From Octopus bimaculoides (lineage: Eukaryota): a DNA stretch of 64,000 bases. Below the pieces are notes generated by a model that was not told where the DNA came from, did no database searches, and saw nothing but the letters and a program-made list of their open reading frames with translations. Below, in pieces: positions 39,276 to 62,762 of the stretch. The position numbers and the translations under genes were made by a program. Location of the stretch: NCBI RefSeq assembly GCF_001194135.2, contig NC_068984.1, positions 130,354,794-130,418,793 of the forward strand, given 5' to 3'. The first letter of the stretch is position 1. Each line of letters begins with the position of its first letter.

Positions 39276-39361
<86 letters not shown>

Positions 39362-40202: not shown

Positions 40203-40289
40203 AATTCCCATTCTCAGAAACCTCAGAAGATTCTGGTCATGAACCCTTAGCAGTGCCACCACTAACTGCTGCAGCAGCAGCAGGACCAT
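40203..40289 (+). CDS. MTA1: Candidate 87-nt in-frame cassette exon of MTA in the BAH variable loop (K-FPFSETSEDSGHEPLAVPPLTAAAAAGP-F)
   Basis: Long polypyrimidine tract (about 40176-40200) plus AG, donor T|GTAAGC at 40290. 87 nt = 29 codons, phase 1 to 1, open only in the frame required by exons 3 and 5, and GC-richer than its flanks. No protein homology recognised, so support is splice signals and frame only. Confidence 0.7.
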
Positions 40290-42933: not shown

Positions 42934-43124
42934 TTCCTTCTATGGAAGAAGATTCCGAAGAGATCAATGATGACATCACAGAGAAACAACGCCATCAATT
43001 GAAGCACAGAGAACTCTTCTTGTCAAGACAAGTCGAGACTTTACCAGCAACACATATTCGAGGAAAATGTGTTGTCACACTTTTAAATGAAACAGAATCA
43101 TTATTATCATATTTGAACAAAGAG
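42934..43124 (+). CDS. MTA1: MTA exon 5 (BAH: [63 protein letters not shown])
   Basis: Acceptor TTGCAG| at 42933, donor GAG|GTATGT at 43125, 191 nt, phase 1 to 0. Contains the conserved [28 protein letters not shown]. Confidence 0.96.
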
Positions 43125-45639
43125 GTATGTTCCTTTCTTCTAAACACAAATTCTACAGTTCTTGTTGGGAGACATTGCATCTAAAATGTTTTGTGTGAAC
43201 TTTGTCCCACCATCTCTCTTTCTCTCACCGTCTTCCTCTTTGCTCACTGGAGAGGCCATGCATCTCCTCTACAAGAACACATCTTTTTTTTTTTTTTTCT
43301 TCTTTTGTCCCTTTATCATACTTTAACCTCTCATCACCTGGAACAAAGCCACCTAACTCAGTCGAGAGAGTCTTTCCTTGCAAATTACTTGGTGCATTCA
43401 TTGATATATGGTGCCGCATAAAAAGCACCCACTATACTCTGTAAAGTGGTTGCAGTTAGGAAGGGCATACTGCCATAATGCCAAAGCAGATTTTGCAGCT
43501 GGGTGCAGTCGACTTGCCAGCTCCTATCAACCCATCCAACCCATGCCATCATGGAAAACACTAAATGGTGATTATGATTTTGACTCTGAACTAAAGAGAT
43601 AAACCAAACCAGTTTTATTATATGCTTGAGTATTGAATATTAGCTGCTATGAAATAGACTGAAAACTACTTTTGTTGGAGAGAGGCTTTGATAAATGGAA
43701 TCACCACTAATATTTTACTATGAAATTTATAAGTTTATTATCAGAAAATAGTTACTGTAAGCTTGTGAAAAAAATCGTTTAAATTGCTAGAATGAAAACT
43801 TAATAATTGATAGAGAACTACGGTGGAAACCTTAAATTAAAAGAATCCAGAAAATCAAAGAAGCACTTGAGAAAGATCTTATTGAAAGCCCATTCAGTAA
43901 GGTTAGCATGGATAACAAGTTTCTCACAGATTTCTGTCACTGACATGATTGGAGAAACTAGTTGTGGATTGGGTATTCACTCCGGGAGCTGTCCATGGTG
44001 ATTATCTATGGAAACATTAAAAGTATTGTTTTCTGAATTGGTTTCAGAAAATAGGGACTTTTATGTGACATTTTGAAACTTCAAAATAATTTTATTTTAA
44101 AAGCTTTAGCTTTCTTTTTTTCTTTTTTACTTATGAAAAAAAACTGTAATTTTATTATTTTAGATTTGTAAGGAAGGGATAAAGTTAGACTGGAGAGATT
44201 CTTATGTTGCTTGTAAGGTTATAATGTGGGGCATGTAGACAAATATAGAGGGGTGGGCTCATAGGTCATTGACAATATTTCATGCAGATATAGAAATTAC
44301 TAATAATTTCAAGGTTGAAATTATATTAAAATATTAAATTCTGTGGTAAAAAAATAAAAAAATCAAAAAAAAAATCAAATATTTGCACTGAATATCATTC
44401 AAAGATTTTACTTGATAGGGTTTTTTCTTTGTTTGCTTTGTAAGTTTCTAAACTCAATTATTCAACATAGTAGAAACTGTTACTTGCAGGTACATGCCTA
44501 TACGTTGAAGCATATGACAATCTTTTAGTAGATACTGGTAAAATCTATTCATATTTTCCATAAAGGTTTATCTTAAAAGCTGTTGTATACCACCTTTTAA
44601 TGCAAGATATCATTCATTAATGATTGAGACTATCCAAGTTTGCCTGCCATTTTCATAACATGAATCAGGTGTTGTTAGAATTTTATTTTCTCTAAATATT
44701 TGTTCATTAGTTCTATTAAATTGTATCTTTTTAAAACTTACATGAAGTTATATAAACTTCAGATTTAGTAATAACAGCCCTGAGTTTGAATGATTTTTGT
44801 TTGCAACAAATAATAAAAATGCATCAAACATAATGCATATGCATTTTATGTTGTTTCAGCCCTTTGTGTATAAACATGATTTCTAGTGAGTGAATTGTGT
44901 GGAAACTTTGATTATATTTCTCTTTCATAACTTTTAGAAGACATCACACCCATTTCCTCCTCATCATGTCTCAAAATTCATTGGCTGTTTCTTTTATTTC
45001 AACTCAAGTGTTCCATATAATGACCTAAGACTAATCACTATGCAAAATGTAAACAAAGAAAAAAAGGACAAACTAGATGAAATTAGCTCATTTGTGCCAT
45101 CCATATAATGAGTGAAGCTACAATATAATGTTGACTGATAACTCATTTTATATGGTGATATTTAAACGAAAAAACTTTATATTTCAAAGTTCACTTGAAA
45201 TGCTCCCGTAAAATTAGACTCTTAAGTTGCTTAAAATATCACTTTAATATAATAAATATAACATAAGAAATAGTTTTAAATTTATGATTATTTCAAAAAC
45301 TCATTGAAACATTTTAGTTAATATCGGGACAAAATAGTTAATAACTTTATAATTGTTCATTGTATCATCTTCTCACTTCACACTGATTTTCTTTCAAAGA
45401 TTTATGATAATTTCAAATTAGGAAACCTATAATTCACACATTGATCTGAATTTGAAGAATATTCAGCCTTGAAAAAGGAAAGAAAAATAGTCTGCAATAA
45501 AAAAGAAAGATTAAACCTAATCTCATCATCAGTTCATCTTTTTTCTATATTAATTAATCTTTTGCATATCTTTTCAAATTGAAATATTAGAATGATGAGA
45601 CAAAAATCTGTCCTTTAAAACTGAAAAGAAAAAAGGTAA

Positions 45640-45713
45640 ATGCTATGATGGTGTATTTTTCGTCATCAGCTAATGTACTTTTGTACTTGTTGATAATCGC
45701 ATGTCTGAGCATT
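45640..45713 (+). ncRNA. SNORD56: Box C/D snoRNA, SNORD56/U56-like, subtype 1 (D' = CAGC), in the intron after exon 5
   Basis: C box ATGATGG 45645-45651, guide TATTTTTCGTCA, D' CAGC, C' TTGATAA, D box CTGA 45705-45708. Terminal stem AAGGTAAATGC / GCATTTTACCTT. The guide is complementary to the conserved 18S segment UGACGAAAAAUA. The 5' half resembles human U56 as I recall it (AUGAUGGCAAUAUUUUUCGUCAACAGC). Confidence 0.82.
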
Positions 45714-47061
45714 TTACCTTCCTTATTATTTCTTTGAAAAGTCTTTCTGTTAACGAAAAGTACTCCATAAATAATATTATTGTCTTAAACATTACAATAT
45801 ATTTGAGATCTATTATAACCTAGTGAAAACAATTTTTTTTTTAATTAGCAAAGGAATATAAACAAATAGATAACTATGTTCAGTATTTGCAAAGAAATAT
45901 TCTAAGATTTAATAATAAACACATATATGTTAGGTGCTCAGAAATAAATGTGTAAATTACTTGTAACTTAATGCTTTCATTAACCAACCTACTCATGGTC
46001 ACCCTTTCTTATATCTAACCATTGTTTATTTTTACCTGTATATATTAAAATCAAAATATTGTAGCAAGCACAACTATGTAGTGGACATTGCAAGTTCTAT
46101 GTTTTAATTTCCTTTAGCAAAAGTGAGGAATTGAATCCTTAATTAAAATTCATATTTCCATGTTATAGGTTAGATGGATCACACTATACTATGTATCGCT
46201 CTAGTTTACAATGAGTGACACTATACCATATATCACCCTAGTTTACTATAAGTATGCTATGGAGGAATTCCTACCTCTTCAACATAGCAAGTCATTGCTA
46301 GGCTTACTTTGGGGGCCTCTCAATTCTAAGTTTTGGTTCCAAGCTTGAAACTTTTTCTCTAAATCTTTGATTCAACTATGAGAACCAAGCCATTGACATA
46401 CAAAGTTCCCGTGAACAACTAGTTTAACCATTTAGTTTTCAGATTACTTTGTAAAACTTTATGCTTATTTACTCACATTGCTTTGAATTAATCATGCATT
46501 ATTTCATAGCTTCCAGATTTTGATGATGTGATTATTCTTAGAATGACATTGCAGGATAGATGTGAGAGGCCAGTTCCGGCTGGTTTGAACATAAAATGGG
46601 TAGAATATTTTGGCTGGTTCTGGCCAATTTAAATGCTAAAGAGTTAAATTACTCTTATGGCCTGAATGACTGTAATACAAAGAGGACTACGAACCAATCC
46701 CTATTGTACCCCAACCTACCTATTATATTCCTTGCTGAACTCATTAACTCACCTAACTGACAATATTGCATACATGTTTTGTATAAACCATTCATCTATT
46801 CCTTGTTTTCTAAATGACTGCCAGACTGCATACTGTGAGACTTTGTTAATGACTTTCTAAGTTTAGAAAGACTAGGAAGAGGGCATTGGTGATACCTTCT
46901 GGTATGAATCTGTCATATTTTTTAATATCTGTTAATTGCAACATTGTTTATAGAAGATATTTTATGTATATGTACTTCTTACTGCTGTAACAAAATTTAG
47001 TAAAGTTTGTCTATAAAACCAAAGTGCTCTTTCACTGAGATGAATTATTTTCTCTTTTCAG

Positions 47062-47179
47062 GATACATTTTTTTATTCATTAGTATATGATCCACAACAG
47101 AAAACATTGTTGGCAGACAAAGGTGAAATTCGAGTTGGTTCAAAATATCAAGCAGAAATTACTCCTTTACTTAAAGAAG
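47062..47179 (+). CDS. MTA1: MTA exon 6 (end of BAH, start of ELM2: [39 protein letters not shown])
   Basis: Acceptor TTTTCAG|, donor G|GTAATA at 47180, 118 nt, phase 0 to 1. Conserved [25 protein letters not shown]. Confidence 0.96.
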
Positions 47180-48442
47180 GTAATATTTTGTTTAGTGTTG
47201 GCATTACTACACTTGCTGTTTCTTCAATATGTCTTAACTTCTTCCATTATTGACAGTTATTATGCATGTTCTTCAGAGAAACAACTTAGAATTAAATACA
47301 GAGATAGTTTGTTTAATTAATGATTGAGAAGAAGTAGAGGCAAGATGTTGGTCAGAACTCTATGAATATGTTATTCTAGTTAAGAAATTTATGTATACAG
47401 TTACAGTGTCATTATGAAGTTGCTAGATGGTGTGCAAAGAAAGATATTCAATACGAAAACTTGTAATATACATCCCAATATCCATTTGCTAGTCATAGTA
47501 ATCAAGTGTGATATAGAAACTTACTGACATTATCAACACTAAGTAGTAAGTGGTGAGATTGAAAATATATGGATATCAAGTGTTTTGTCTAAACACCTGG
47601 ATGTCGCACACACATATATTACCTGGGCATTGCTGTGTGGCCATGTTAGTTTACTTACAATACCATTCTATATCTACTGACCCAATTTCCATTTTCTGTT
47701 TCCTGTGACTTTATTATTACAGTTTTCATAAATATTTTCATCAAATAGTTAGTCAGGTCATCTTAAACTAAGCCTGTAGGTATTTCATTTCCACACACTC
47801 ATACCATACACTGAACAGTACATAGATCTAATACCTAAGAAGAATTAACTACCTGTATGTTTCTATTAATTATAAAAATTAGGATTGGGAAGGAAGGACT
47901 CTATTAAACTTGAATTTGATCTCTCCGATTTTCCAGAACCTAGAATGCCATGATTTGAACTGATTTCTTGATTTTTATCTGCTAATGAAATATTAACTTG
48001 GGTGTACCAGAAATAGCTGAAGATAGAAAGAGTTTATGGCGACTGTCTATTAAAGGAGTAGTTAAATGAATACTTGTACATCATGAGTGATATCAGTTCA
48101 AATACCAGTTCTTTTATTTTTCAGCTAGCCTCTTTCTCTTATGATAAATATGTAATTAGTTAATGTAGTTTCTCTTTCTATTAGTTTTGTTCATATAGTT
48201 TTCATTGACATTCAAAGACAAGATTATATTATATGTTTGTCAGAAGTGTGCTGTAAAAGATTAATATAGGTACATAATATGAGAATTGCACACAGGTACT
48301 TACAAGAAAAATGGTAGTTGGTGATGATATGGGAAATGAGAAAAATTTTAGCACAAGATGCAGGTGTCTGGTGTCATATTTTAGAGATTATTTGAAGTAA
48401 AATTAACTTTTTTTTTTTTTTTTTTTTTTTTGTTGCTTATAG

Positions 48443-48551
48443 GTGAAAAAGATGGAAGAAGCTTGGATGAACTTGAGCAGTTAATTTGGCTGCCTGGCCC
48501 TGATAACACCTTAACACCAAAAGAAATTGATCAGTTTTTGATATTAGCCAG
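48443..48551 (+). CDS. MTA1: MTA exon 7 (ELM2: GEKDGRSLDELEQLIWLPGPDNTLTPKEIDQFLILA)
   Basis: Poly-T tract plus TAG| at 48442, donor AG|GTTGGT at 48552, 109 nt, phase 1 to 2. Matches the MTA pattern E..G.D...LE..VW....LT..QIDQFL..AR. Confidence 0.93.
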
Positions 48552-49169
48552 GTTGGTTTACAGAAATTTTGTTTATTAAATGAACTATTCTAAATTGTCC
48601 AAAGTGTTCTTGTTTTGTCTTTTCAGCCAGCCAAAAATGTTGTGTTCCAGAAATTTTTTTTTTTCGTTTTTTTCACATTTCTCGTCTTAAAGAAGATGAA
48701 TTCAGTCTGTTGAAATTTATTTAAAAAAAAGTTTTATTCTTTTTCCTCTTTTTTGTTATGAAAACACCAGACCAGGGTTTTCTTATATTTAAATCAAAAT
48801 ACTGATGAAGGCAGTGATATGATGTGATTTCACTTGGTAAACACTTGTACACTGTCAGAAATTGCAACAATGTGAATTCCTTTTCCTCAAGGTTTCTTAG
48901 TTATTTTTTCCTTGTGTATTTTTTTATTTTTATAACACCCCGTCCACCCCCCAAAAAAAACTTTAAAAAAAAAATTATGTTAGCTTCAGATTTAGTAATA
49001 GTAATTCTAATTTTGAATGCTTTTATGTTTTTTTTTCTCTTTCTTTTGAATGTAACAACTAACAGAAATGCTATAAGCAATAATATGGAGTGGACTTTGA
49101 ACTAGATGTTTCAATTTCTAAATTAAAAAGCAATCTGTGGTTTAAAAGTGAATTCTTTCCATTTGGTAA

Positions 49170-49251
49170 ATGCCGTGATGTATTATTTTTCGTCATCAGC
49201 ATTTATACCATTTAGTTTTGGTATCTGTTGACAATTGAAAATCTGAGCATT
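49170..49251 (+). ncRNA. SNORD56: Box C/D snoRNA, SNORD56/U56-like, subtype 1 (D' = CAGC), in the intron after exon 7
   Basis: C box GTGATGT 49175-49181, 13-nt guide TTATTTTTCGTCA, D' CAGC, internal hairpin ATACCA/TGGTAT, C' TTGACA, D box CTGA 49243-49246. Terminal stem GGTAAATGC / GCATTTTACC. Confidence 0.82.
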
Positions 49252-50533
49252 TTACCTATCTTGGTCCCCTTAAGTTTGAATTTTTTTTCCAGTCCTATTT
49301 GTTGGGTCTGTCCTAATGTATTTAAATAATTAGTCAGTAAATTAATATTTATTACATAATTTGACTAATACACCAGCTTTTAACATGACATGTTGGTTTG
49401 ATATATATCAGATATCTAATGGAATTTAGGCTTCTGATGTTGTTTGATAGTCTTTTTGTTGTCAAAGTGGGTTTTTTTCTTCTCAAATATATTAATATAT
49501 TTTAGGTTAATACTTCCAGACTAAACATAACTGTGGTTAACCCTTATCTAGAAGACGTGTGATGAAATTACTTTCTTTTATTTAGGCATAATGTATTGGT
49601 GAATACATTATCCAATGTGTCCTTTTTTTTTATAAGACATTGAAGGGTTGCATGTGGAAGATGTGACTATGAATTTGTAGGTGGTCAAATGACCACATAA
49701 TGATACTTTCATTAGCTTGTTAGGCTATTTATTATGTGATCTATGAGATGTTTTCACTTGATAACCTTGCTATTGCTTATTTTCATTATTAACGTTTTGA
49801 GTAGATAGCATGAATAACATAAAGCACAAAATAATTTTGAGTTTCAAATTACTTACTTCAATGGTTGAGACAACATTTAATACAATAGCTTCATCCACTT
49901 GACCCATAACCTAACTTTAGACAATGACATTATATATTCAGTTTGAACTGTTGCAGGTTAGGGATTGAGAAACATGCAATAAATTGTTTGAAGATTTTTT
50001 TTTTTTTCCTTCTTAACAAGTGTTTTCTTATAGCCTCAGACTGACCAAGGCTTTGTCTGAAATTTAGTAAACAGAACCTGTGTGGAAATCCAACATATAT
50101 GTTCGTTATGGCCTGAACAATGTGCTTTGACAAATGGAGATTGATGAAATAACTACCAGAAGTACTGGGAACAATATGACTGATTAAACCCGAACATAAC
50201 TGGGTAAAGTTAGAATAACAATAGAAATGATTTAGATCAATATAGTCATTGTAGATTATTGGAAAGTGTGTGTTTATTGAGCATTCTATATTACAGAATG
50301 TGTATATGTATGATGGGTGGCTGCAAAGTCTAGTTCTCTAGTGTGTGAAAATAGTGATGTTGGTAGATATATATATATATATATATACACACACAAATAA
50401 AAAAGAAAAATACACAGAGCAGACATTGAATATTGGCTCCACCTGGAGTTGATGAATCCAGTCCTATTTTATTATGATTTAGATCAGAATTTTTTTTCAC
50501 TTTGGTTCACAATATAAAACTCTTGTTTACCAG

Positions 50534-50633
50534 GTCTGTTGGTACATTTGCTCGAGCTTTGGATTGTACCAGTACTGTGAGGCAGCCAAGTCTTCATATG
50601 AGTGCAGCAGCAGCTTCAAGAGATGTCACATTG
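50534..50633 (+). CDS. MTA1: MTA exon 8 (ELM2: [34 protein letters not shown])
   Basis: Acceptor ACCAG|, donor TTG|GTAAGT at 50634, 100 nt, phase 2 to 0. Near identical to MTA1 [34 protein letters not shown]. Confidence 0.96.
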
Positions 50634-52156
50634 GTAAGTATTGCATTACTCTTTCATTCTTACTCCCAGTCGTATGTCCAATCAACATTCATCATTATTA
50701 TCATCATTTTAACAGCCATTTTCCTAAGCATGCATAGGTTGGGTGGAAGTTGTTGAAGCTGAATTTCTATGGCCAAATGCCCTACCTGTTGCCAACTATC
50801 AAAGGTTTCCAAGTGAGGCAATATTTTTCCATAGACAGACATGCTTCCTTCCACAAAAGATTGGGAACAGACACTGCTTGTATGATGATTATATTCTTTT
50901 ACAACTATCACGTAATATCACAAGGAGAGGCTGATGCATGCGCACACGCATACACACATGAACTTTTAGTTTCTGTCTATGTAGAAATGATGAACTTCTG
51001 TTAGTTGTGCACAATGAGACAAAAATGTTGTTGTCTTTCCAGATGCACAGCTTCTTAATATCACAACTATTACCTTATGTCTATTTTCCATCAAAGGATT
51101 TTGAGTAAAATGATTTAAGTGCATATTTATTTCCAAATTTGTATTCTTGATTTTGTTAAACATCTGAAGATTAACTATCAGAACCTCTTGAATAAAACAA
51201 ATGTCAAGGTACCTTCATAAATTTTAAGGGTATTGTTATGGGAGGATATCTCCTGTAAAATATTAAATGTACTTACAAAATATTCTGAAAGATGTTCAGA
51301 ATTTAAATGTGTGTTACTTTAATGTAGATGTAATAAATCACATAATCCATATGTTTTACTTTAAAATAAAAAATCATACTTGGGAATTAAAATATTTAGA
51401 TATTACTTTTAAATAATTAAAGGACATTTTTATGAAATAATAAGATGTGAAACCTATAGATACTAAAGAAAGAGTGCAATCATTCTGGCCAAGTGTTGTG
51501 CTTGCTTCAATTTGCTTGACTAAAGTTTTGTTTGTTTCTAATGGTTTGGTTGGAAAGAACAGTTTATGCCCATGGCATTTGTAAACCAGACCGGTGAGAT
51601 AGATGTAGATTACTTGAACCAGAGCTGTTAGGAAATTCTAGTGGGAGAAAGGACTGGGGAAAGTGGTCAATGTGTGGCTTAAATGGAAAGGCAGAAAAAC
51701 TATCAGTGACAAGAGGGAGCGATGAGTGAGTTTGGAGGGTGTAGATGGGAGTTCCACAAGCCCGGCTGAAGAGCATATGTAATAGTAAAGGTAGAGTGAG
51801 ATTACAGCTCATTCAAACCTGAGATTGGAATGTTGACAATCAATTGCTTACCAATCAGTTTAGTTACTTTTCGATCAGGTTGGGATGTCTGAATAGAAGC
51901 AGCATTAGTTATCCAAGATGTGTGAACTATAATCCACTGTATAGGGTTATTAGTAATGCAAAGGCCAGTCTTTGTGATATAGTCTTTGCAGTGTCAAGGA
52001 AGGACATGATATTATCAATAATGGTGAAGTTGAGTATCTGTTGTGACTTTGTGGGGTTTGTTTATATTTTGAGATGAAGTGTGATATTGTTTTCTTTGTG
52101 TGTAATTATTGACAATTAAGGTGGTGAAGGAGACAATGTAAATTTGNNNNNNNNNN

Positions 52157-52452
52157 AAGTGTTGTGCTTGCTTCAATTTGCTTGACTAAAGTTTTGTTTG
52201 TTTCTAATGGTTTGGTTGGAAAGAACAGTTTATGCCCATGGCATTTGTAAACCAGACCGGTGAGATAGATGTAGATTACTTGAACCAGAGCTGTTAGGAA
52301 ATTCTAGTGGGAGAAAGGACTGGGGAAAGTGGTCAATGTGTGGCTTAAATGGAAAGGCAGAAAAACTATCAGTGACAAGAGGGAGCGATGAGTGAGTTTG
52401 GAGGGTGTAGATGGGAGTTCCACAAGCCCGGCTGAAGAGCATATGTAATAGT
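52157..52452 (+). other. Exact 296-nt copy of 51491-51786 bounded by N gaps; probable assembly artefact
   Basis: I saw no differences from 51491-51786, and N runs flank it on both sides. Confidence 0.75.
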
Positions 52453-52751
52453 NNNNNNNNNNTCCCAGAAGTACATATTTGTATAACCCATCCTTGTCTG
52501 TTAAGGGTACCACATAAATTTATATGTATGCAGTCAAAACTTACATTGCTTTTACATAAGTATCTTTAAAAATGAAGTATTTGAAGCATCATTTAGGTAT
52601 TACAGAGTTAATAGGAAAAAATAGAAGTAAAACAAGAAAATATTGTAATTAGCTGTTCTTGCATAGCTTTCAAACAGATTTTCTTTTTGAAGTTATATTG
52701 ATTACAAATTGTACTACAATTAATCACCCTGCTTGAATCTCTAGATTATTT

Positions 52752-52786
<35 letters not shown>

Positions 52787-52872
52787 TTTAGTGAAAGGTT
52801 TAAACAGTGATCAAACTGTTTTTAGATTGAAGTTATTTATGCTGTTTAACTAAATCTTTCACAATAAGGTAA

Positions 52873-52950
52873 CTGCTATGATGGTTTTATTTTTCGTCTC
52901 TGAATGTACCATTAACTTTGGTACTTGTTGATAAAAAATGTCTGAGCACT
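52873..52950 (+). ncRNA. SNORD56: Box C/D snoRNA, SNORD56-like, subtype 2 (D' = CTGA, shifted register), in the intron after exon 8
   Basis: C box ATGATGG 52878-52884, guide TTATTTTTCGTC, D' CTGA 52900-52903, hairpin GTACCA/TGGTAC, C' TTGATAA, D box CTGA 52942-52945. Proximal stem TGC/GCA and distal 10-bp stem TTCACAATAA (52858-52867) / TTATTGTGAA (52951-52960). Confidence 0.78.
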
Positions 52951-54164
52951 TTATTGTGAATTTGCAAACATAAGGATGGTTAAGTTACATAGTTTCAAGT
53001 TCAATGTCGCTGCACGGCACTTTTAAGTAAGTGCCTTCTATAACTCGGACTGGTGAATGCCATATGAAGGAATTCAGGTGATAGGAACTGTGTATGCTCA
53101 TATTTCAACACTTATGTTTGTCATGACTATTCCACCCTGTGCTTTCATAAACTTGTGTAATTAAGAAATCCCTTAGCTGAAAAACAGGAAGAGTTGCCTT
53201 GAAGAAGAGAATCTGGATGGAAAATCCTGCTTCAACTAACCCTCTGTACAAACCTAGCATAGAAGAACAGATAATGAATAAAAACACACACTATTAAAAT
53301 TATCAATAATGCTTTCTTAACATTTTAGACTCTAGTGTGTGCGTATAACATCATATGACCTATCTGGCAGTTGATATATGTATAATTTAAATTTTCACTT
53401 AAAAACATTAAACAAATTCTGTTCAAAACTAGAGCAAGGGAGACAACCTAAGTTATACTGTACAGTGAAAATTGCATAGTATTAAACAAATTTATAGGGT
53501 ATATTCATAGAATATTTTGTAGCTAAACGTATCATTTTACCCATTCAGCCAACTGTATGATGATATCAACATGGCATCAGGCATATCTTTATTTGTAGCA
53601 TTCATAGCTAAACATTGGGTCTTATGCTGTACTCCATTATTTACTTCAGTATTTTTTTGAAGTGGTCAGAAAACCCAATACAAGATGTGTTCATTTAATG
53701 TCCACCTTTCCATGCTTACAAAGGTCAAGCAAAATTCATTGAGACAAGTTTCTCTCTTTTTTTTTTTTATAACTGGATGCTCTCCCTGCTGCCAATCTTT
53801 TAAATAATGCTGTATGTCCCTTAATGTTTTGAACACAAACAGAACAGTGGCTAAACTTGATTTCTTGGAAGACTGCAAACTAGTGATACTATTTACTTGT
53901 ATGACAGCAGTAGTCATTTACAACCAGTACCTGATCTCAAGGCAAGAAATGAACACATTCAGGCATATCCCACACGCACACGTACAAATATACACACGAT
54001 GGGTTTTCAATTTCCATCTACCAAAACCATTTACAAGTTATTGGCCAGTAGAAGACCCTTGCCCAAGGTATTGCACAGTGAGATTGAACCTAAAACCATG
54101 TGGGTGAGGAAGCAGACATCTTAATTGCAAAACTCTCTCTCCCCTCTCTTCCCCCCTCTCTCTC

Positions 54165-54202
<38 letters not shown>

Positions 54203-56409
54203 GTTTTCTATATGCACAGTTAAATGTATGACTACTGGTGAATTGGGAGCTCCATATCATCATCCAGTCTACTTAATATACAGTTGTCATTAACAGTTAG
54301 TTAAATTTAGTCAACCATGACATAAATTTCTGCATTCTATCATGCATTTAAAATCCAAACATATATATATATATATATTAACAACCTGAACCGCAAGCTA
54401 ATTATCATTTAACTGTTACACTAAAGGACAGTCTGCAAAATCAGTATGATATATATTGTAATAGATATATTCATTACTTATAGTTAATTATAAGGTCTAA
54501 TATGCATGTTTAATCCTTACTTAGTTTAGGTTCAAATTCCACACAGGCAAAGTTAGCAAAACTATAAGTAAAGATTTCGAGAGCATTTCATAACAAAGCT
54601 ATTTCATATTTAAAAATTTGGGGAACTGTGGGCATGTGATAGTAAACTAGCAGTTGATATTGAAATTAAAACAAAGGTATATTTATCCACAACTAAAATT
54701 TTATTGAAACAATAAAGAGGAAGGGAGACAACCTTAATTATAGTGTAAAGTGAAAAAAAAAAAGTCTTGTAATAGACAAAATTTATAGATATTTAAAAAA
54801 TTTTCTAGTGGAACTTGATAATGTTTGAGAACTGCATACTACTCTTCAAACAATTAGATCCAGATATTAATGCTTCTTTAAACAAGTCTATATATGAAGA
54901 GCTTACTTTCAAAACCAGATATATGCATCAGAATCACTTTTGAGTAATTGAGGAAACAACAACTTGAATATATCTGATATTGATTAGAAGACTAAGATTT
55001 GTCTACGGTCTATATGGCATCTATCCCAGTTTGACCGAAAAAAATTTCTCATGCATGAAGCCAGCTTGCAGATTGTATTTTAATGGTTATCATGAAATCG
55101 ACCAAATATGCACTTACACTGATTTTGAAAGTAAGCTCGTCTTATAGTGAACCGTCTTCAAACTGAATTAATAGCTAGGGGTTTAGTAGTGTTTTCGTTG
55201 ATTATCTGAGTTTATTGATGATAGGAGTTAATGTTACATACATATAAGAAATACATAAGCTGTATGCTAAACAAAATAAACACTAACAAAATTTCAGAAA
55301 ACACAGGCATCAGACCAGTTCTTGGACAAACTCGGGGCAGACCTTGGAGGTAGAGGGGAAATAACTGAAAAGGTGGCAAACAACAACAAAAGAACTGTGA
55401 CTAACAAACAACAAATTGATTGCTTAACCAGTGCAATTAAACAAATGATCAATTAGTTAGTTGGTTTGACATTTAAACCAATTGACTAACGAAGAAGTAA
55501 TGCTGAACTAATGTGTATGTCATTGGCATAATGACCCTCCCGAGACACAAAATTTGTTTCAACACACAAATTCACACCAAGAATTTTACAAACCAAATAC
55601 AAAAACGAAATAAAAATGCTTTATAAAGCTAAAATAGATTTCATGAGGTGAGCTCGATTTGATGGATGGTGGTAGAGGTGATGGTTGTTATTACTAGTTA
55701 GTTGAGCTATAATGCTCCACTGTTCTTTACTTCTCACATGTGAGGTGACTGAGGAAGGACTGAACTTGAAATAGCATCAGGTGAATCGTGAGTATCAATG
55801 ACAAGGCTTAACAGGTGTAGTGAAGTTCTGATAGATAAATTGTCTTGAAGAATGAATTAGGTTTCAGTTGTTTACCATACTGTGTTGCTTCTAAATAGTG
55901 TATTCATTCTAGGTCCTAAAATATTGAGAACTAAAAATCAGTTTCTGTCAACAAGTCAATATACAATGCTGGATGCTCCTCGTATTGACAGCCCTCACCT
56001 TTTTCCAAGCCAGGTAAAATTTCACTTTGGGAAACAAGGAAACTAATAACCTTTTTTGATAATGATGGTAGTGGTGGTACTTATGTATCATCATCTCGTG
56101 ATGTCAAGGCAATGGTATGCACATTTGCTCCCCCCCCACTTATATATATATATATAGTCAGATGTTATGCAGCATGCTTCATGCGTGTGTATATTCATCT
56201 GTTTCCTTTGATGCCTGTTTTTCCATGTTAACTGGGTTTAGACAGGAAATTGTGGATGGAGCCTTGCTTGTGGGTAATTTGTTGACAGATGTAAACAACC
56301 ATCACCTGGCACTGTTCAAGCAGAAATGCTGACATCACTATATGCCTAGCATATTATCCCAAACATTCATAACATTTTTTTTTTCTTATTTTTCTTTCTG
56401 TCCCTACAC

Positions 56410-56487
56410 CTCCTCTTAGTTCATTAATCCGATTCTTATCTTTCAGCTCTCCTCTTAGTTCATTAATCTGATTCTTATCTTTCAGCT
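56410..56487. repeat. 39-nt tandem duplication (2 copies, 1 mismatch)
   Basis: Unit CTCCTCTTAGTTCATTAATCYGATTCTTATCTTTCAGCT. Confidence 0.8.
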
Positions 56488-58327
56488 CTCCTCTCACCTC
56501 TAATTTTCCATCTCATCTTCACCTATTTTTCATTTCTTTCCTTCTCTCTCCTACAACTTGTGTTCCCCATCAGTTGCAGCCTGTTTCTCTAACAGATTCT
56601 AAGACTCTGTTGTTTTTCTTTTGCGCACACACACACACACACACCTATATACTTACATATATACATGTATACATGTGTATGTAAGCCAATGTATATATGA
56701 ATCTTTAACTTGTTCAAATCATTGGACTGAAGCCATACTGAGGCACAGCCTTGAAGGGTTTTAGCTGAACAAATCAACCCTAGTCTTCTCCCACTCTTGT
56801 TTTAATTTTCTTTTTGACACATGATACATATTCTATCAGTCTCTTAGCTGATACACTAAGTTTAGGGGATGTAAACAAACCAACACTGGTTGTCAAACAG
56901 TGTGGGGGACAAACACAAAGATATGCATATGCAATGGACTTTTTTCATCTTCCAGATTTACTCAAGGCTTTAGTTGGCTCAGGGTTATGTGGTTAGGAAC
57001 CAAACTTTTTACCACACAGCCACATCTGCACCTATATGCTTATAAAGACAAATGCATACACATTTCATATGGATAAACATGTGAAAAAATATATTTGTGG
57101 TGCAAGAATGGATGTTTATTTATAAAGATTCTTTTGGAACTACCCAGTTTCAGGTTAATATCACTATGCTACATCTTTGCAATTTGTCAGTTTGTATAGC
57201 CCTGCCCTAACCAGTGCCTTCTGAGTGAATTTGAGAGATGGAAACTGAAAAAATCTGGTGTGTCTGTGTGTGTGTAATCTCTGCTTAAATGCTGATGTTG
57301 ATATTTTTTGTTGATGGTATAGTTATGTGTATTTGAAGAATTGTGAAATAAAGGATTCTTCTACTTGATACATGGAGAAGGGCTGGCAATAGGAAGAGCT
57401 TTTGGCTGTAAAAGCTTGTCTCCACTAAATCTCCATCCAAATGCATGCTGGCATGGAAAAACAAACACCAAATAAGTAAAAGTGTGTGTGTGTAAATATA
57501 TTTTATACATACACTGGTGCAGGTATGGTCATGTGCTTAAGGAGCTTGCTTCCCAACCATGTGGTCTCTGGTCCAGGCTCACTGTGCGGTCTTTTGGGCA
57601 AGTGTCTTCTATTATAGACTTGGGATGATCAAAACATTGTGACAGGATTTGGTTGACAAGAACTAGAAGAATTGTCTGTATGTGTCTTGTTTTGACATTG
57701 TGTGATGGTTGCAAATGATCATCATTGTTACATAAGCAATATTGTTCAGTTCTAGTCTTCTTTGAAAAACATGTCTAGCCATAAGGAAATACTACCTGGA
57801 AACAGATAAGGGTTGGTGACAAGAATTGCATGCAACTGTAGAAAACCTGCTTCAACAAAATTTTGTCTTGACCCATGCAAGCATGGAGTGAACATTAGAC
57901 AGTAATGATGACATATATACGTACGTACATACATACATACATACATACATAAATAGATATATATATATATATATAATAAAACTACACGTGTATGTGCATA
58001 TATATATATATGTTCATGTACATATGTGTAATGTTTAGTGTTTTAAGTGTGGTATTGGAAGCATCAACAGTTTACATTAGGTATTATAGAATTGACTTGG
58101 AAAACTTGATGTAGAATTCAAAGCGATGTGCTGAACTTGAGTAATAATACATGTTCTTGTATAGTTTTGAAACTGATCATATTTTTGATGTAATACTTGA
58201 TTAAAATCATTCTGCACTTTCTCATCTTGTTTGTGTAATATAGTATATCTTTTGGAAGACAAACTGATTGCAGTTCAGATATTTTAAATGTAAAGATCAG
58301 TGTATTTGTGCTGTTTCACAATAATGT

Positions 58328-58408
58328 AAATGCTATGATGGTTTTATTTTTCGTCTCTGAATGTACCATTTACTTTGGTACTTGTTGATGATCAATATCT
58401 GAGCATTT
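58328..58408 (+). ncRNA. SNORD56: Box C/D snoRNA, SNORD56-like, subtype 2 (D' = CTGA), second copy in the intron after exon 8
   Basis: C box ATGATGG 58335-58341, guide TTATTTTTCGTC, D' CTGA 58357-58360, hairpin GTACCA/TGGTAC, perfect C' TTGATGA, D box CTGA 58399-58402. Stems AAATGC/GCATTT and TTCACAATAA (58315-58324) / TTATTGTGAA (58408-58417). Confidence 0.8.
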
Positions 58409-58724
58409 TATTGTGAATTTCCAAGGATTAGCTTAGCTGTGCAGTTAAGAAGTTCACTTTGCAATTATGTAGTTTTAGCTTTGTTTCCACTGCTACTCTT
58501 GACATAGATGTCTTCTGTAGCCCCAGTTTGACCAATGCTATGTGAGTGAATTTGGCAGACAAACTGTTGTTTGTCCTTTCTTGTTTGACATTATGTACTG
58601 TTTGTGACCAAACATCATTATTATGCAAAAAAAGTATTCCTGGATGAGTGTTTCATAATTTGCAACAGAAATAAGGAAGAGCTTATAAGGATTCCTTAGA
58701 TTAATCAAGGCATTTATGAATTAA

Positions 58725-59240
58725 TTCAAGTGACAATGGAAGTAAATGAATTGGAACTTCCTTTCTTGGACATTTTGGTTATAAAGGAAAATGAGAGTAT
58801 TGCAACTAATCTCTGCTGCAAAGGCATGAGCTGCAAATATATGAACACACTCCAATACTTAGACCTTAGATTTTGCCATCCATCCCATATTGAAAGAAAT
58901 ATCCCATTTAATTTGGTAAAATGTACATGTGTAATAGTTACAGACACAGATGAAATATGACTGGAAGAGCCAAAAATATTCTTCTGGACACCTGAAAAAC
59001 TTACTAAATAATGTCATAGCAAATACCCCTTACTTGCAGACAGACTGGAATTTGTTTGAAGGGGAAGACATAAATAAAAATATTCCATTTGTAGTCAGCC
59101 ATAATTCCAAAAGCTACATAGTCTTGCATTCAGCCAAATGATATCTTCCATTTTGACACCAATCTTCAAATCTAAGAAAAATAGTTACAAATTATTTGCA
59201 ACAAACACAACCACCAAATCTTGAAAGACTCTTAACAAAG
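58725..59240 (+). mobile_element. Penelope-like element RT C-terminal fragment
   Basis: TMEVNELELPFLDILVIKE..QYLDLRFCHPSHIERNIPFNLVK matches the PLE RT pattern FTME.E..LPFLD..V...YL...S.HP....RNIP.NL. Degenerate. Confidence 0.7.
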
Positions 59241-62200
59241 GTGAAATTTACATATATTTATTATTGTGAAAGATAGTTAAATTCTTATGAGATATGGAAC
59301 AGTGATCTCAAATGACTAAATGGTAAATTTATTGACAAAGAAAAATTCCACCTCATAAAGATACTTGTGAAAACAGCACCAAAAAAAAAAAAAAAAAAAT
59401 CAAGTAATATAGAAGTGGGAGAGAAGATAATGAAACCAGGGCTTTAGAGAATATCGAAGCAAACTGTAGTCTTCTATAAATTTCCTGGAGAATCATCCAC
59501 AGTGCATTAGAAATTTGGGACAGAATGAAAGAACAAAACTTAGAATGCTTACTGACAAGACGCACATACTTTCTTGTATTCCAAATAAACTAATTTGGTT
59601 TCATTCCTTAACTCAACCTGCAGCAGAAGACCATGAATATGTCTTAATTTTTAGTTTTCCATGGTCGTAGCTTAATGTTGGTGGGAGGGTACTTTCAAAG
59701 AGAATTTTCCTAATACCTGCAATGACAAATCCAATGTGGATTTTGCCAGATTATGAAACTAACAATTAAGGGGAGAGTGGCAGCCCAAGTCACGGAACTA
59801 AGAAATAAGGAAACAAATGCACCCTGTTTTGTTCTTTCTCATCACAATCTAACAGAAGATATATGACCAGCAATAAAACAATTGGCTGTGTGAAACAAGC
59901 CAAGGGTGATAAATGCTTGCTCATTAGCATTAATTTCTGTATGGAATGTGTTAATTATTGTGGTTAATCAATTGTTGGAATATGGATTATAGACTGGTTA
60001 TAGATTGTTTTATCTCCCTGATTCATTGTTTTCAATTGAAGTGCTCTCATCCAACCAAAACAGAACAGCTCTTTATAAGGTGTGACTGAATGAAAGAATA
60101 GTGGAGACTTCATGAATTATTTGTTAGTTTAAAAAAATCATCTGTTGATGGAGGGTATACTTATACAAAACAATACATTCTACTTATATTTTTCTATTAT
60201 GCAGACCTAGAGGCCTCAATGGTTTCGCTAGAGAAGTAGAAGTGTTCAAATCCTATGGACTTAGTTGTGTATAATGTGGTTTAAACTGTCTTTGTCATAT
60301 AATCTGTTTATGCTTGATGTTACATTGAATAAATGTTTGTTGTTTTCCCGCCGTGCTTTGGTCTCTCAACTCCTTGATGGAGTGATAGGGTGCTGCCATT
60401 CTAATATACAATGTTTTAGGCATTTTTAGTCCCAGTGGAGCCTATTCCCCTCCAGGTCTGACCACAGCCACCTCAGACACAAAAAGAATAAGGGAGTGAA
60501 AAAGAAGAACCAACTCCAGTACATGACTGGTACTTTATTATCAGCCCTGAAAGGCAAAGTTGATTTTAGTGGGATTTGGAACTCTGTGCATAGAGAGCCA
60601 GTGTGATAACTTCAAAGCAGTCTATCCACTGCCATCTGACTGCCTTAAATGTGAGGATGAATAAAAAGAGGTCTTTCTAGAGAATTTGAAAATAAGAAAC
60701 TAAAACAATAAGACAAAAACCTTGTCATTAGTTAACATTCTTTATATGTGGTATAATCACAAATTACTGCCATGGTTCAACCCTCAGTCAACCCTGATCA
60801 AGCAGATCTATAATCACCAAATTCATTATATCTTTCCTTTTTGAAGTTCAAGCAACCTCATTGAAAATTCCCAATTGGTTTGCCCAACAATTGGCAAATT
60901 CTACCTAACAGTTATGATTTATACATGAGGAATAGGGGATTGACTAAATGAACTCTCTAAACCTTATGGCAGCCTCATTAGGAAAAGAAAATCCTAAATC
61001 AGAAATTTCCAAAGACTAATTTACATTAACCAGTCAGAATAGAAAGAAAGTAACAATTTAGGGAATGTTCTCCATGAAAAACCAATTCCTTTTTACTGGG
61101 CCAGTCAAAATATTTGTAATTCACAATTATGAGAGCTAACACTGTAAAATTGAGTACTTTATGATACATTATGACTGGTTTTTAGTAAATTGATGGTGAG
61201 TGGGGGTTCCAGGCTTACCTGTGTAAACATGGCAATTTGAATGGAAAATGTTGGTTAAGCTCTATATCTGTTTCCCCCCAAAGATGCATTCTTTGATTCT
61301 CGTCTGTACATTGTTACATATTTTCCTATAAAATGTTAATAGACATGTGCATGCCAGAAGTGTCATTGTTACATGCACATGTCTCCATTTAACATTTTCC
61401 TATAAACCTTGATGTATACATATAGATTTACTCATTCACTTCATATATAATTCTTATTCTTGTTTTACCTGTTTTAATTGACTTTATTTGATTTTAGTTG
61501 AATGTTTATAAATTATCATAGATCTTTCAGTGGGTGTAATTCTTTTGGTTTTAGTTATGATTGTGTATAAGATGGTGACACCATTTAAAAAAAAATCTTT
61601 TATGCAAAGTATTCATTTGTTAGTTCTGTTAGGCACAAGTATGGCTGTGATTAGAAGCTTGCTTCCCAAGCACACATCTTCACGTTCAGGCCCAGGCCAA
61701 CAAATACTTGTGAGTGGGTTTGGTAAGGGAGACTGAAACAAGCACATTGTGTGTATGACTGTTTGCTTGCCTTCACTTCATGTGATAGTTATAAATGAAT
61801 GTCACCAACATGCAAGTGGTGTCCTTCATTTCCAATTTTCCACGGAAACAGTAGGGTATTTGTTGGTAATGAGGTGACGTCCATCTGTAGCAAATTTGCC
61901 TTGACAGATGCCATCCAACCCATATAAGTTTGGAAAAGTGGGTGTTAAATGATAATGGTGGTGTTAATCACAGACATGTCTTCAACAGTATTTCTGATTT
62001 CTTAGGGGTGATTTAAGTTTAATTGAATAATGCAGGATGCAATAAAGATTTCAAACATGTCTGCTGTACATATTGAACATTCCAATGTTAATTAGTTTAT
62101 CTATAGTTTAATTTTGTTTTTCCAAAAGGAACAGTAGCACTTTTTGTCTAAATCTTAAAGTTAAATGATGAATACTGAATTAATGGTATTTTTTTAAAGT

Positions 62201-62573
62201 TATAGTTATCTCGATAGGTGTTATTTACCATCAACACCTAATTGTGTTTTGTTGTCTAAATAGTAACATGAACAGTTTATTTTTTTAAAAAACCTGTAAT
62301 AATAAATAATTTATTTGATGGCTTGTAAGATGCACCTCCTTTTTTTTAACCATCAAAAATATCTCTTACACTAATTTTGTTCCTGGTGTTTAACATACAC
62401 TGCGGAAATTAGGATGCACCTGATATGCTGTCAAATATGGTATATTGCTGCTATTTCTATTCATTCATAGTGTGGGCTATTTATACGTAGTTGGTTTAGA
62501 AATTAGTTTCATGTGTGAAATATGCTGTTTTAGCATTGTTGCTTCTCTAAAATTTTATGTTATCTTTTTTCAG

Positions 62574-62762
62574 TTTCATGCCATGGATACTTTACATAGA
62601 AGTGGCTATGACATAGCGAAAGCTGTTACGAGTTTGGTACCACAAGGTGGTCCTGTACTGTGTCGGGATGAAATGGAAGAATGGTCTGCATCTGAAGCTA
62701 ATCTATTTGAAGAAGCACTAGATAAATATGGCAAAGACTTCAATGATATAAGGCAAGATTTT
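62574..62762 (+). CDS. MTA1: MTA exon 9 (end of ELM2, SANT: [63 protein letters not shown])
   Basis: Acceptor TTTTTTCAG|, donor TTT|GTAAGT at 62763, 189 nt, phase 0 to 0. Conserved [30 protein letters not shown]. The gene continues beyond the window. Confidence 0.96.

What the first reader, a model, noticed from the sequence alone, without database searches (positions are those of the whole stretch)
45640..58408. Unannotated cluster of four intact SNORD56-like box C/D snoRNAs hosted by the chromatin regulator MTA
Seen: four 70-80-nt intronic, sense-strand units with C, D', C' and D boxes, terminal stems and a shared guide TATTTTTCGTC. Established: this guide pairs with the conserved 18S segment GACGAAAAAUA. 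Human U56/SNORD56 guides Cm517 there and is hosted in NOP56. Two copies even keep the non-canonical D' CAGC of human U56 as I recall it. Inference: host switching to a NuRD subunit plus local amplification links rRNA methylation capacity to MTA transcription.
Basis: partly seen in the sequence, partly recalled or inferred. Interest (0 to 1): 0.75.

Follow-up and report, generated by a model that had tools for sequence, protein, structure and literature searches.

The report
Octopus MTA-intron box C/D snoRNA cluster
The introns of an octopus chromatin-regulator gene (MTA) carry a small, still-changing family of box C/D snoRNA genes whose guide matches the 18S rRNA site methylated by human U56/SNORD56, which is a sound but ordinary addition to snoRNA annotation.

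Summary
The four units at 45635-45718, 49165-49256, 52868-52955 and 58325-58412 (+ strand) each have C, D', C' and D boxes, a terminal stem, an internal hairpin and the identical guide UAUUUUUCGUC. They lie in sense introns of an MTA gene whose exons are 296/296 aa identical to Octopus bimaculoides MTA3.

The Octopus vulgaris MTA locus has seven copies. Between the two species, three copies (11545, 45654, 49184) change less than their flanking intron (1.5% vs 4.8%, p=0.011). The two intron-8 copies show no such constraint, and one of them has lost its D and D' boxes in O. vulgaris.

Rfam gives no hit at its gathering score (SNORD56 about 18 bits against 36). The units are therefore functional analogues and probable distant homologues of U56, not demonstrated family members.

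MTA genes of four other molluscs lack the snoRNA. Two unidentified eukaryote contigs carry the same guide in an HSPA9 intron. Host relocation is plausible but is a well-known phenomenon.

The assembly gaps bracket a 296-bp redundant block in intron 8 and touch no snoRNA.

Verdict: new members of a known kind, low to moderate interest.

The parts
45635..45718 (+). snoRNA copy c45654 (group A). C box 45645-45651 AUGAUGG; guide 45654-45664; D' 45667-45670 CAGC; C' 45688-45695; D 45705-45708. Lies in MTA intron 5 (43125-47061).
   Evidence: The O. vulgaris orthologue (L123 34193-34276) differs at 1 of 84 positions, and that position is in the non-guide spacer.
49165..49256 (+). snoRNA copy c49184 (group A). 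C 49175-49181 GUGAUGU; guide 49184-49194; D' 49197-49200 CAGC; C' 49226-49233 UGUUGACA; D 49243-49246. Lies in MTA intron 7 (48553-50535). Its hairpin AUACCA/UGGUAU shows a compensatory change relative to GUACCA/UGGUAC.
   Evidence: The positional orthologue is L123 39187-39281. O. vulgaris has two further copies of this type, at 35921 and 37965.
52868..52955 (+). snoRNA copy c52888 (group B). C 52878-52884; guide 52888-52898; canonical D' CUGA 52900-52903, one nucleotide closer to the guide than in group A; C' 52926-52933; D 52942-52945. Extended outer stem CACAAUAA/UUAUUGUG. Lies in MTA intron 8 (50634-62573).
   Evidence: The O. vulgaris orthologue (L123 42934-43021) has D' CCGA and D CAGA, with 6 of 88 substitutions.
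58325..58412 (+). snoRNA copy c58345 (group B). C 58335-58341; guide 58345-58355; D' CUGA 58357-58360; C' 58383-58390 UGUUGAUG; D 58399-58402. Second copy in MTA intron 8.
   Evidence: The orthologue is L123 48675-48762, with 9 of 88 differences, several of which resemble c52888; this may reflect gene conversion.
30499..30579 (+). Decayed group-B copy (pseudogene). The guide is intact, the C box is mutated to AGGAUGU, D' is UUGA and the D box is deleted.
   Evidence: 60.9 bits. It sits in a ~1.4-kb segment collinear with the segment around c52888 (29159-30652 vs 51450-52967, flanks 67-77% identical). No counterpart was found in O. vulgaris.
11545..11637 (+). Divergent sixth copy. C 11558-11564 AUGAUGG; guide GAUAUUUCGUC 11566-11576, with one internal mismatch to the family guide; D' CAGU 11579-11582; C' 11605-11612; D 11622-11625. 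Lies in MTA intron 3.
   Evidence: (29.2 bits, E 0.0015). There are 0 substitutions in 91 aligned nt against O. vulgaris L123 7824-7914, while the flanks differ at 13/393 and 15/381.
6119..62762 (+). Host gene: the 5' part of an MTA (NuRD subunit) gene. Exons are approximately 6119-6146, 8018-8085, 10402-10494, ~40202-40290, ~42939-43124, 47062-47180, 48443-48552, 50536-50633 and 62574-62762. The gene continues beyond the window.
   Evidence: tblastn; splice sites; 296/296 aa identity to O. bimaculoides MTA3 isoform X3; Pfam BAH, ELM2 and SANT domains on homologues.
52147..52462 (.). Assembly artefact inside intron 8: two 10-N gaps bracket a 296-bp block (52157-52452) that repeats 51491-51786 exactly.
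   Evidence: 100% identity over 296 bp; N runs. The O. vulgaris locus has this sequence once per collinear block.

Best explanation
These are intron-encoded box C/D snoRNA genes of an octopus, most likely Octopus bimaculoides.

Proposed mechanism:
- Each unit is transcribed as part of the MTA pre-mRNA.
- The long terminal stem brings boxes C and D together into a kink-turn, on which the core proteins (15.5K/Snu13, Nop56, Nop58, fibrillarin) assemble.
- Exonucleases then trim the spliced or debranched intron back to the protected particle.
- The 11-14-nt element upstream of box D' pairs with the conserved 18S segment 5'-GACGAAAAAUA-3'. It places fibrillarin on the nucleotide opposite the fifth guide position upstream of D'. 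In the two CAGC copies this is the equivalent of human 18S C517.
- The short, non-conserved spacer before box D is not a guide.

The family grew by DNA-level local duplication into neighbouring MTA introns and is undergoing birth and death. Three copies (11545, 45654, 49184) are maintained by selection. The two intron-8 copies are redundant and drifting. One copy (30499) is dead.

Shown: the sequence anatomy, the structure with covariation, the intronic sense location, conservation and copy turnover between two Octopus species, and absence from MTA in four other molluscs.

Inferred: expression, snoRNP assembly, the rRNA target and the methylated position.
For: - The guide is exact in 5 window copies, far above chance, and in 6 O. 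vulgaris copies.
- Boxes and spacing are as expected: C and D', and C' and D, with a 15-nt C-to-D' spacer.
- The fold gives a terminal stem plus an internal hairpin.
- Covariation: 7 pairs with changes on both sides, 96% of cells paired, 0/500 shuffles, and slid controls at 25-56%.
- All 6 window copies and all 7 O. vulgaris copies are on the host's sense strand.
- Paralogue bodies are 74-91% identical, while their 200-nt flanks are at the background level of 57 +/- 3%.
- Between species, group-A bodies differ at 4/267 positions against 110/2293 in flanks (Fisher p=0.011).
- Features shared with the Rfam SNORD56 consensus go beyond the guide: AUGAUGG, the CAGC position, UGUUGAUA and a short D spacer.
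- Human SNORD56 guides 18S C517, and that paper states the modification seems conserved in most eukaryotes (PMC4288182).
- The same guide occurs in box C/D-like units in other eukaryote contigs (L090, L006, L041).
Against: - There are no expression data of any kind.
- Rfam gives no hit at gathering score, and SNORD56 is no better than several unrelated C/D families on isolated slices.
- This species' 18S sequence could not be examined.
- The units lie 1.2-9.6 kb upstream of the next 3' splice site, far from the ~70-80 nt that is optimal in mammals. Two units share one intron.
- Group-B copies show no cross-species constraint (15/176 vs 89/1466, p=0.19). One of them has lost D and D' in O. vulgaris.
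- In group B the canonical D' CUGA sits one nucleotide closer to the guide. The N+5 rule therefore points to the neighbouring G rather than the C.
- The covariation alignment was fitted to the model.
Confidence: 0.78

Rival explanations
1. The units are snoRNA-derived dead sequence. An ancestral snoRNA was copied around the MTA introns by segmental duplication. The copies are pseudogenes that still look intact, and the working Cm517 guide lies elsewhere in the genome, for example in NOP56 or HSPA9.
For: - One copy is clearly decayed (30499-30579).
- The O. vulgaris orthologue of c52888 has lost D and D'.
- Group-B bodies evolve as fast as their flanks.
- The units sit at unfavourable positions in long introns, and two share one intron.
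- Rfam scores are sub-threshold.
Against: - Group-A copies are significantly more conserved than their flanks between species (p=0.011). c11545 has 0 of 91 substitutions.
- The boxes are intact in both species for 4 or more copies.
- There are compensatory stem changes.
- Paralogue bodies are kept at 74-91% identity while flanks are randomised.
- New intact copies have been gained or retained in O. vulgaris.
Confidence: 0.12
2. The units are genuine snoRNAs but act on something other than, or in addition to, 18S C517. Possibilities are: an adjacent 18S nucleotide (group B, through the shifted D' register); another RNA (c11545, through its altered guide); or the host pre-mRNA itself, through pairing with nearby intron sequence to influence MTA splicing.
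For: - In group B the guide is shifted by exactly one nucleotide relative to both boxes. The 15-nt spacer is preserved and D' is a canonical CUGA.
- c11545 has a changed guide yet is perfectly conserved between species.
- Regulation of host splicing by intronic snoRNAs has been reported in mammals (PMC10324135, listed; only its title and abstract were seen).
Against: - The 11-nt guide is identical in every other copy, and in unrelated eukaryotes that carry it in different hosts. This points to the universal rRNA site.
- Group B, the set with the shifted register, is the set without detectable constraint.
- No alternative target was found or searched for, because no rRNA or snRNA sequences of this species were available.
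Confidence: 0.08
3. The units are a chance resemblance or part of a generic interspersed repeat (SINE or MITE) unrelated to snoRNAs.
For: Octopus introns are full of repeats. Several interspersed repeats and microsatellites surround the units.
Against: - The full box set, spacing, stems and covariation are present.
- A generic C/D scan finds only these units in 128 kb of both strands.
- Similarity between copies ends within about 10-100 nt of the unit, except inside collinear segmental duplications.
- There are no terminal inverted repeats, A-tails or target-site duplications at the O. vulgaris insertion.
Confidence: 0.02

Closest known systems
Human U56 / SNORD56 (Rfam RF00275), the box C/D guide for 18S Cm517, hosted in a NOP56 intron
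   Same: - Same antisense element (UAUUUUUCGUC) upstream of D'.
- Same unusual C box ending in G (AUGAUGG).
- Same non-canonical D' CAGC, two nucleotides after the guide, in two copies.
- Same C' UGUUGAUA.
- Same short, non-guide spacer before box D. The target assignment comes from PMC4288182.
   Different: - Rfam scores are 17.9 and 18.2 bits against a gathering score of 36.
- The host is MTA, not NOP56.
- The family is multi-copy (6-7 copies).
- The terminal stems are longer (9-13 bp).
- There is a stable internal hairpin.
- A second subtype has a canonical D' shifted by one nucleotide.
U14 (SNORD14C/D/E) in consecutive introns of hsc70/HSPA8, and similar same-family multi-copy intronic snoRNAs in one protein-coding host (from my own knowledge)
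   Same: Several paralogues of one box C/D family occupy successive introns of a single broadly expressed protein-coding gene. They arose by local duplication.
   Different: The snoRNA family and the host are different. Here two copies share one intron, and copy number differs between congeneric species.
snoRNA intragenomic mobility and host turnover (Hoeppner and Poole 2012, PMC3511168)
   Same: The snoRNA is conserved while its host gene differs between lineages. It is in MTA in Octopus, absent from MTA in four other molluscs, in HSPA9 in two unidentified eukaryotes, and in NOP56 in human.
   Different: That work is dominated by vertebrate and model-organism data. The mechanism here looks like DNA-level segmental duplication, not retroposition: no A-tail and no target-site duplication were seen.
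Externally stemmed intronic box C/D snoRNAs that are processed independently of their distance to the branch point (Hirose and Steitz, mammalian cells; from my own knowledge)
   Same: The units lie far from the 3' splice site and carry extended terminal stems of 9-13 bp. This is the feature reported to compensate for a poor intron position.
   Different: Processing was not tested here. The rule was established in mammals.

Membership tests
Box C/D snoRNA (general class) | Box C (RUGAUGA) near the 5' end and box D (CUGA) near the 3' end | tested here: met
   AUGAUGG or GUGAUGU, plus CUGA, are present in c11545, c45654, c49184, c52888 and c58345. They are absent or mutated in c30519.
Box C/D snoRNA (general class) | A terminal stem that juxtaposes C and D | tested here: met
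   MFE folds. Helix 1 has 9 pairs, 95% of cells paired and 3 pairs with changes on both sides.
Box C/D snoRNA (general class) | Internal C' and D' boxes | tested here: met
   C' is UGUUGA(U/C)(A/G) in all copies. D' is CAGC or CAGU (degenerate) in group A and CUGA (canonical) in group B.
Box C/D snoRNA (general class) | An antisense element of at least 10 nt ending next to D or D', complementary to rRNA or snRNA, with the target opposite the fifth upstream nucleotide | tested here: inconclusive
   The guide is the reverse complement of GACGAAAAAUA, the human 18S 515-525 segment as I recall it. N+5 gives C517 for the CAGC copies and the neighbouring G for the CUGA copies. No Octopus 18S sequence was available in any tool.
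Box C/D snoRNA (general class) | A stable ~70-100-nt RNA bound by fibrillarin, Nop56, Nop58 and Snu13 | not testable with these tools
   No expression or CLIP data were accessible.
Box C/D snoRNA (general class) | Animal intronic type: located in an intron on the host's sense strand | tested here: met
   All 6 window copies and all 7 O. vulgaris copies are on the + strand within MTA introns.
SNORD56 (Rfam RF00275) | Covariance-model score at or above the curated gathering score (36 bits) | tested here: not met
   There is no hit at gathering score in the window. On isolated slices the scores are 17.9 bits (c45654) and 18.2 bits (c49184). Metagenome homologues L006, L041 and L090 are also not recognised.
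SNORD56 (Rfam RF00275) | The same guide and target (18S Cm517) upstream of D' | tested here: met
   The guide aligns to the consensus AAUAuUUUUcaUCAACAGC. All upper-case guide positions are identical, and the D' CAGC is in register in group A. The target comes from PMC4288182. Methylation itself was not tested.
SNORD56 (Rfam RF00275) | Host gene NOP56 (the vertebrate arrangement) | tested here: not met
   The host is MTA. The octopus NOP56 locus could not be fetched.
snoRNA retrogene (snoRT) | A 3' A-rich tail and flanking target-site duplications | tested here: not met
   Neither is seen at the copies or at the ~200-bp O. vulgaris-specific insertion in intron 6. Group-B copies lie in collinear ~1.4-kb segmental duplications.

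The most novel reading that the evidence does not exclude
The octopus MTA locus may be a live example of snoRNA gene birth, neofunctionalisation and death by DNA-level copying between neighbouring introns.

- The group-B subtype has its guide slid by exactly one nucleotide between unchanged boxes and has a canonical D'. It could direct a cephalopod-specific 2'-O-methylation of the G next to the C517-equivalent.
- The perfectly conserved divergent copy c11545 may have acquired a different target.
- Copy number differs between O. bimaculoides (6) and O. vulgaris (7, with new copies in two further introns). This could change snoRNA dosage between species.
Probability: 0.15. Interest if true: 0.45.

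Novelty: new member of a known kind. Interest (0 to 1): 0.3.

Why it matters
snoRNAs of cephalopods, and of lophotrochozoans in general, are almost unannotated, because vertebrate-trained Rfam models miss them, as they do here.

This locus provides:
- a validated seed for a cephalopod covariance model: six paralogues plus seven from a second species;
- a predicted guide for a conserved 18S methylation;
- a clear case of lineage-specific host relocation with ongoing copy turnover.

It does not change how snoRNAs are understood. Multi-copy intronic families and host mobility are established, and a chromatin-regulator host has precedents. No evidence supports a special functional coupling between NuRD and rRNA methylation.

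Tried and rejected
- Rfam at gathering score over the whole window gave nothing.
- Rfam at E<=10 over 30-59 kb gave only microsatellite-driven miRNA look-alikes (mir-3149, mir-297 and others at 56.6 kb and 57.9 kb). I rejected these as low-complexity (TA/TG)n. It also gave one weak SNORD16 hit.
- SNORD16 was the top hit on the c45654 slice (23.9 bits). I rejected it because its guide (18S A484 site) is not the one present, and the score comes from the boxes.
- The metagenome pattern scan returned about 120 loci. Nearly all are chance matches in bacterial coding sequence. Only L090, L006 and L041 look like snoRNAs.
- MTA loci of Lottia, Candidula, Patella and Saccostrea have no guide match and no covariance-model hit.
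- Look-ups of Mizuhopecten, Liolophura and O. bimaculoides isoform proteins were not on record.
- No squid, cuttlefish or nautilus MTA appeared in the protein searches, so the age of the association within cephalopods could not be tested.
- I considered retroposition (snoRT) as the copying mechanism and rejected it.
- I considered haplotype or assembly duplication as the source of the copies. I rejected it because copies differ by 9-26% and have unrelated flanks. The only true assembly duplicate is the gap-bounded 296-bp block.


Full report
**1. What is in the sequence**

The guide TATTTTTCGTC occurs exactly five times in the window, always on the + strand (30519, 45654, 49184, 52888, 58345). 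Counting hits with up to one mismatch gives 8 against 1.27 expected, and none of 100 shuffles reaches 8.

Reading the surroundings gives four complete units:
- 45635-45718
- 49165-49256
- 52868-52955
- 58325-58412

Each unit has the following layout:
- a 5' stem (GGUAAAUGC);
- box C (AUGAUGG or GUGAUGU);
- a 15-nt spacer that contains the guide;
- box D';
- a hairpin (GUACCA...UGGUAC);
- box C' (UGUUGAUA);
- a 9-11-nt variable spacer;
- box D (CUGA);
- the 3' stem (GCAUUUUACC).

Minimum-free-energy folds show the terminal stem and the internal hairpin in every copy. With 10 nt of flank added, the intron-8 copies add an outer 8-bp stem CACAAUAA/UUAUUGUG.

A generic scan for C box, D box and a terminal stem of at least 6 bp, run over both strands of the window, returned only members of this family.

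**2.

I built a covariance model from the four units and searched the window. It found two further copies.
- 30499-30579 (60.9 bits). The guide and hairpin are intact, but the C box is AGGAUGU and the D box is deleted. This is a pseudogene.
- 11545-11637 (29.2 bits, E 0.0015). C, D', C' and D are all intact, but the guide is GAUAUUUCGUC, with one internal mismatch to the family guide.

On the seven-member alignment (six window copies plus metagenome contig L090), 96% of cells pair. Seven of 15 pairs show changes on both sides. None of 500 shuffles reaches this, and sliding the partners drops pairing to 25-56%. That alignment was fitted to the model, so the figures lean towards the structure.

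**3. The assembly gaps**

The N runs at 52147-52156 and 52453-52462 bracket a 296-bp block (52157-52452) that is 100% identical to 51491-51786. It is most likely a redundantly placed contig.

Everything involved lies inside one intron. The nearest snoRNA begins 406 nt downstream of the second gap. Reading frame is not an issue, and only the stated intron length is uncertain, by about 316 nt.

**4. Host gene and organism**

tblastn with an MTA1 sequence written from memory, and then with a real octopus protein, maps nine + strand exons with canonical splice sites:
- 6119-6146
- 8018-8085
- 10402-10494
- ~40202-40290
- ~42939-43124
- 47062-47180
- 48443-48552
- 50536-50633
- 62574-62762

The encoded 296 residues are identical to Octopus bimaculoides MTA3 isoform X3. 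They differ at one residue from O. vulgaris. At the DNA level the window is 86-94% identical to the O. vulgaris locus.

The copies lie in these introns:
- intron 3: c11545 and c30519;
- intron 5: c45654;
- intron 7: c49184;
- intron 8: c52888 and c58345.

They are 1.2-9.6 kb upstream of the next 3' splice site.

**5. Are they maintained?**

*Within the genome.* The snoRNA bodies are 74-91% identical. Their 200-nt flanks are at the background level for unrelated sequence, 57 +/- 3%. The exception is the three group-B copies (30519, 52888, 58345), which sit in collinear ~1.4-kb segmental duplications with flanks 67-77% identical.

*Across species.* The O. vulgaris MTA locus (L123) holds seven copies, all on the sense strand:
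- orthologues of c11545, c45654, c49184, c52888 and c58345;
- two extra c49184-type copies, one in intron 5 and one in intron 6;
- no counterpart of the dead c30519.

Counting substitutions in aligned columns gives the following.

| Set | Body | Flanking 400 nt | Fisher p |
|---|---|---|---|
| Group A (c11545, c45654, c49184) | 4/267 (1.5%) | 110/2293 (4.8%) | 0.011 |
| Group B (c52888, c58345) | 15/176 (8.5%) | 89/1466 (6.1%) | 0.19 |

Within group A, c11545 has no substitution in 91 nt. The single change in c45654 falls in the non-guide spacer.

The O. vulgaris orthologue of c52888 has D' CCGA and D CAGA, so it has lost both boxes. The O. vulgaris copy orthologous to c58345 resembles c52888 at both ends, which suggests gene conversion.

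My reading is that three copies are under purifying selection, two are intact in this genome but redundant and drifting, and one is dead.

**6. How the copies spread**

The O. vulgaris-specific copy in intron 6 is a ~200-bp fragment that replaces ~26 bp of the O. bimaculoides sequence. It has no A-tail and no target-site duplication.

The extra copy in intron 5 carries upstream sequence that is paralogous to intron 6.

Together with the collinear group-B segments, this points to DNA-level duplication, recombination or conversion between neighbouring introns, not to retroposition.

**7. What they most likely do**

Human SNORD56/U56 guides 18S Cm517, and that paper states the modification seems conserved in most eukaryotes but not in yeast (PMC4288182).

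The guide here is the reverse complement of GACGAAAAAUA. As I recall the human 18S sequence, this is the segment G515-A525 (my own knowledge).

In group A the sequence ...UCGUCAU|CAGC places the guide G five nucleotides upstream of D'. That G faces the C517-equivalent, as in the Rfam SNORD56 consensus ...UCAA|CAGC.

In group B the guide is shifted by one nucleotide relative to both boxes: one extra U on the 5' side and one fewer nucleotide on the 3' side. The 15-nt spacer is kept and D' is a canonical CUGA. A strict N+5 rule would then select the neighbouring G.

The region before box D differs in every copy, so it is not a second guide.

The long terminal stems fit the mammalian observation that external stems compensate for a poor position in the intron (my own knowledge). 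Expression, snoRNP assembly and methylation are all inferred.

**8. Comparison with the known family**

- There is no hit at gathering score.
- On isolated slices SNORD56 reaches 17.9 bits (c45654) and 18.2 bits (c49184) against a cut-off of 36. This is on a par with SNORD16, snoR38, SNORD36 and SNORD63.
- The same model also fails to recognise box C/D units with this guide in other non-vertebrate contigs. The model therefore appears too narrow to recognise non-vertebrate sequences, and its failure is weak evidence against homology.

Several features are shared with the SNORD56 consensus beyond the guide: the C box ending in G, CAGC in register, UGUUGAUA and the short D spacer. These make distant homology likely. 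Membership as Rfam defines it is nevertheless not met.

**9. Host relocation**

The MTA genes of four other molluscs contain neither the guide (up to one mismatch) with a C box nor any covariance-model hit:
- Lottia gigantea
- Candidula unifasciata
- Patella vulgata
- Saccostrea echinata

A pattern scan of metagenome contigs produced mostly chance bacterial matches, with three exceptions:
- L090, a 1257-bp AT-rich eukaryotic contig, carries a clear homologue (44.3 bits).
- L006 and L041 each carry a box C/D-like unit with the same guide inside an intron of a mitochondrial Hsp70 (HSPA9) gene.

The host of this guide therefore differs between lineages. This agrees with the established picture of snoRNA intragenomic mobility among broadly expressed hosts (PMC3511168).

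I could not test whether NOP56 was the ancestral host, or whether octopus NOP56 still carries a copy. Decapodiform cephalopod MTA loci were also out of reach.

**10. Verdict**

- These are bona fide-looking box C/D snoRNA genes and functional analogues of U56.
- They are probably distant homologues of U56.
- They sit in a lineage-specific host and show ongoing copy turnover.
- The proposed regulatory link between NuRD and rRNA methylation has no support beyond co-transcription.

This is a new member of a known kind. It is useful for cephalopod non-coding RNA annotation and as a small case study of snoRNA birth and death, but it would not surprise a specialist.

Noticed in passing
window 52157-52452 vs 51491-51786: A 296-bp block bounded by two 10-N gaps is 100% identical to sequence 666 bp upstream. 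It is most likely a redundantly scaffolded contig inside MTA intron 8.
   Followed up: yes
window 11545-11637: This divergent family member has intact boxes but an altered guide (GAUAUUUCGUC) and a different hairpin. It has no substitution against O. vulgaris over 91 nt, while its flanks differ by 3-4%. It may retain the same target with weaker pairing, or it may have a new target.
   Followed up: partly
L123 35921-36015 and 37965-38056 (O. vulgaris MTA introns 5 and 6): O. vulgaris has two extra intact c49184-type copies that the window lacks. One is a ~200-bp fragment replacing ~26 bp, without an A-tail or target-site duplication. The other carries upstream sequence paralogous to intron 6.
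   Followed up: partly
L006 ~1284-1380 and L041 ~6218-6300 (metagenome contigs JAAUYJ010163008.1, JAAUYL010058881.1): Box C/D-like units with the same UAUUUUUCGUC guide lie in the intron that follows the exon encoding GIDLGTTNSCVAVMEGK...VVAFT of a mitochondrial Hsp70 (HSPA9) gene. The organisms are unidentified, GC-richer eukaryotes. In L006, D' is a canonical CUGA in the C517 register.
   Followed up: partly
L090 752-846 (Ga0302161_10032295): An unidentified AT-rich eukaryotic metagenome contig holds a clear homologue of the octopus units (44.3 bits), with C box AUGAUGA, D' CAGU, a different but paired hairpin and C' UGUUGAC. The contig also contains an internal ~500-bp direct repeat. No host exon is recognisable.
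   Followed up: partly
window 56620-56696 and 57927-58043: Rfam E-value hits to mir-3149, mir-297, mir-568 and mir-1277 fall on (TA)n/(TG)n microsatellite hairpins. All are far below their gathering scores and are low-complexity artefacts.
   Followed up: yes
window 30283-30400 with copies near 17154, 19263, 20823, 21863, 23644, 26620: A ~120-bp interspersed repeat, 70-76% identical and on both strands, is scattered through the gap-rich part of MTA intron 3. This part of the intron (about 14.7-33 kb) is not collinear with the O. vulgaris locus.
   Followed up: no
window 1048-1962 (- strand): Open reading frames here resemble a mariner/Tc1-type transposase remnant (...HQYLHAIRRVSKLGQWVPHKPFESNRVQRVNVCSSLL...), upstream of the MTA start codon.
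   Followed up: no
L123 9437: In O. vulgaris intron 3 there is a bare exact match to the guide with no C or D box nearby. It may be a relic of a lost copy or a chance match.
   Followed up: no
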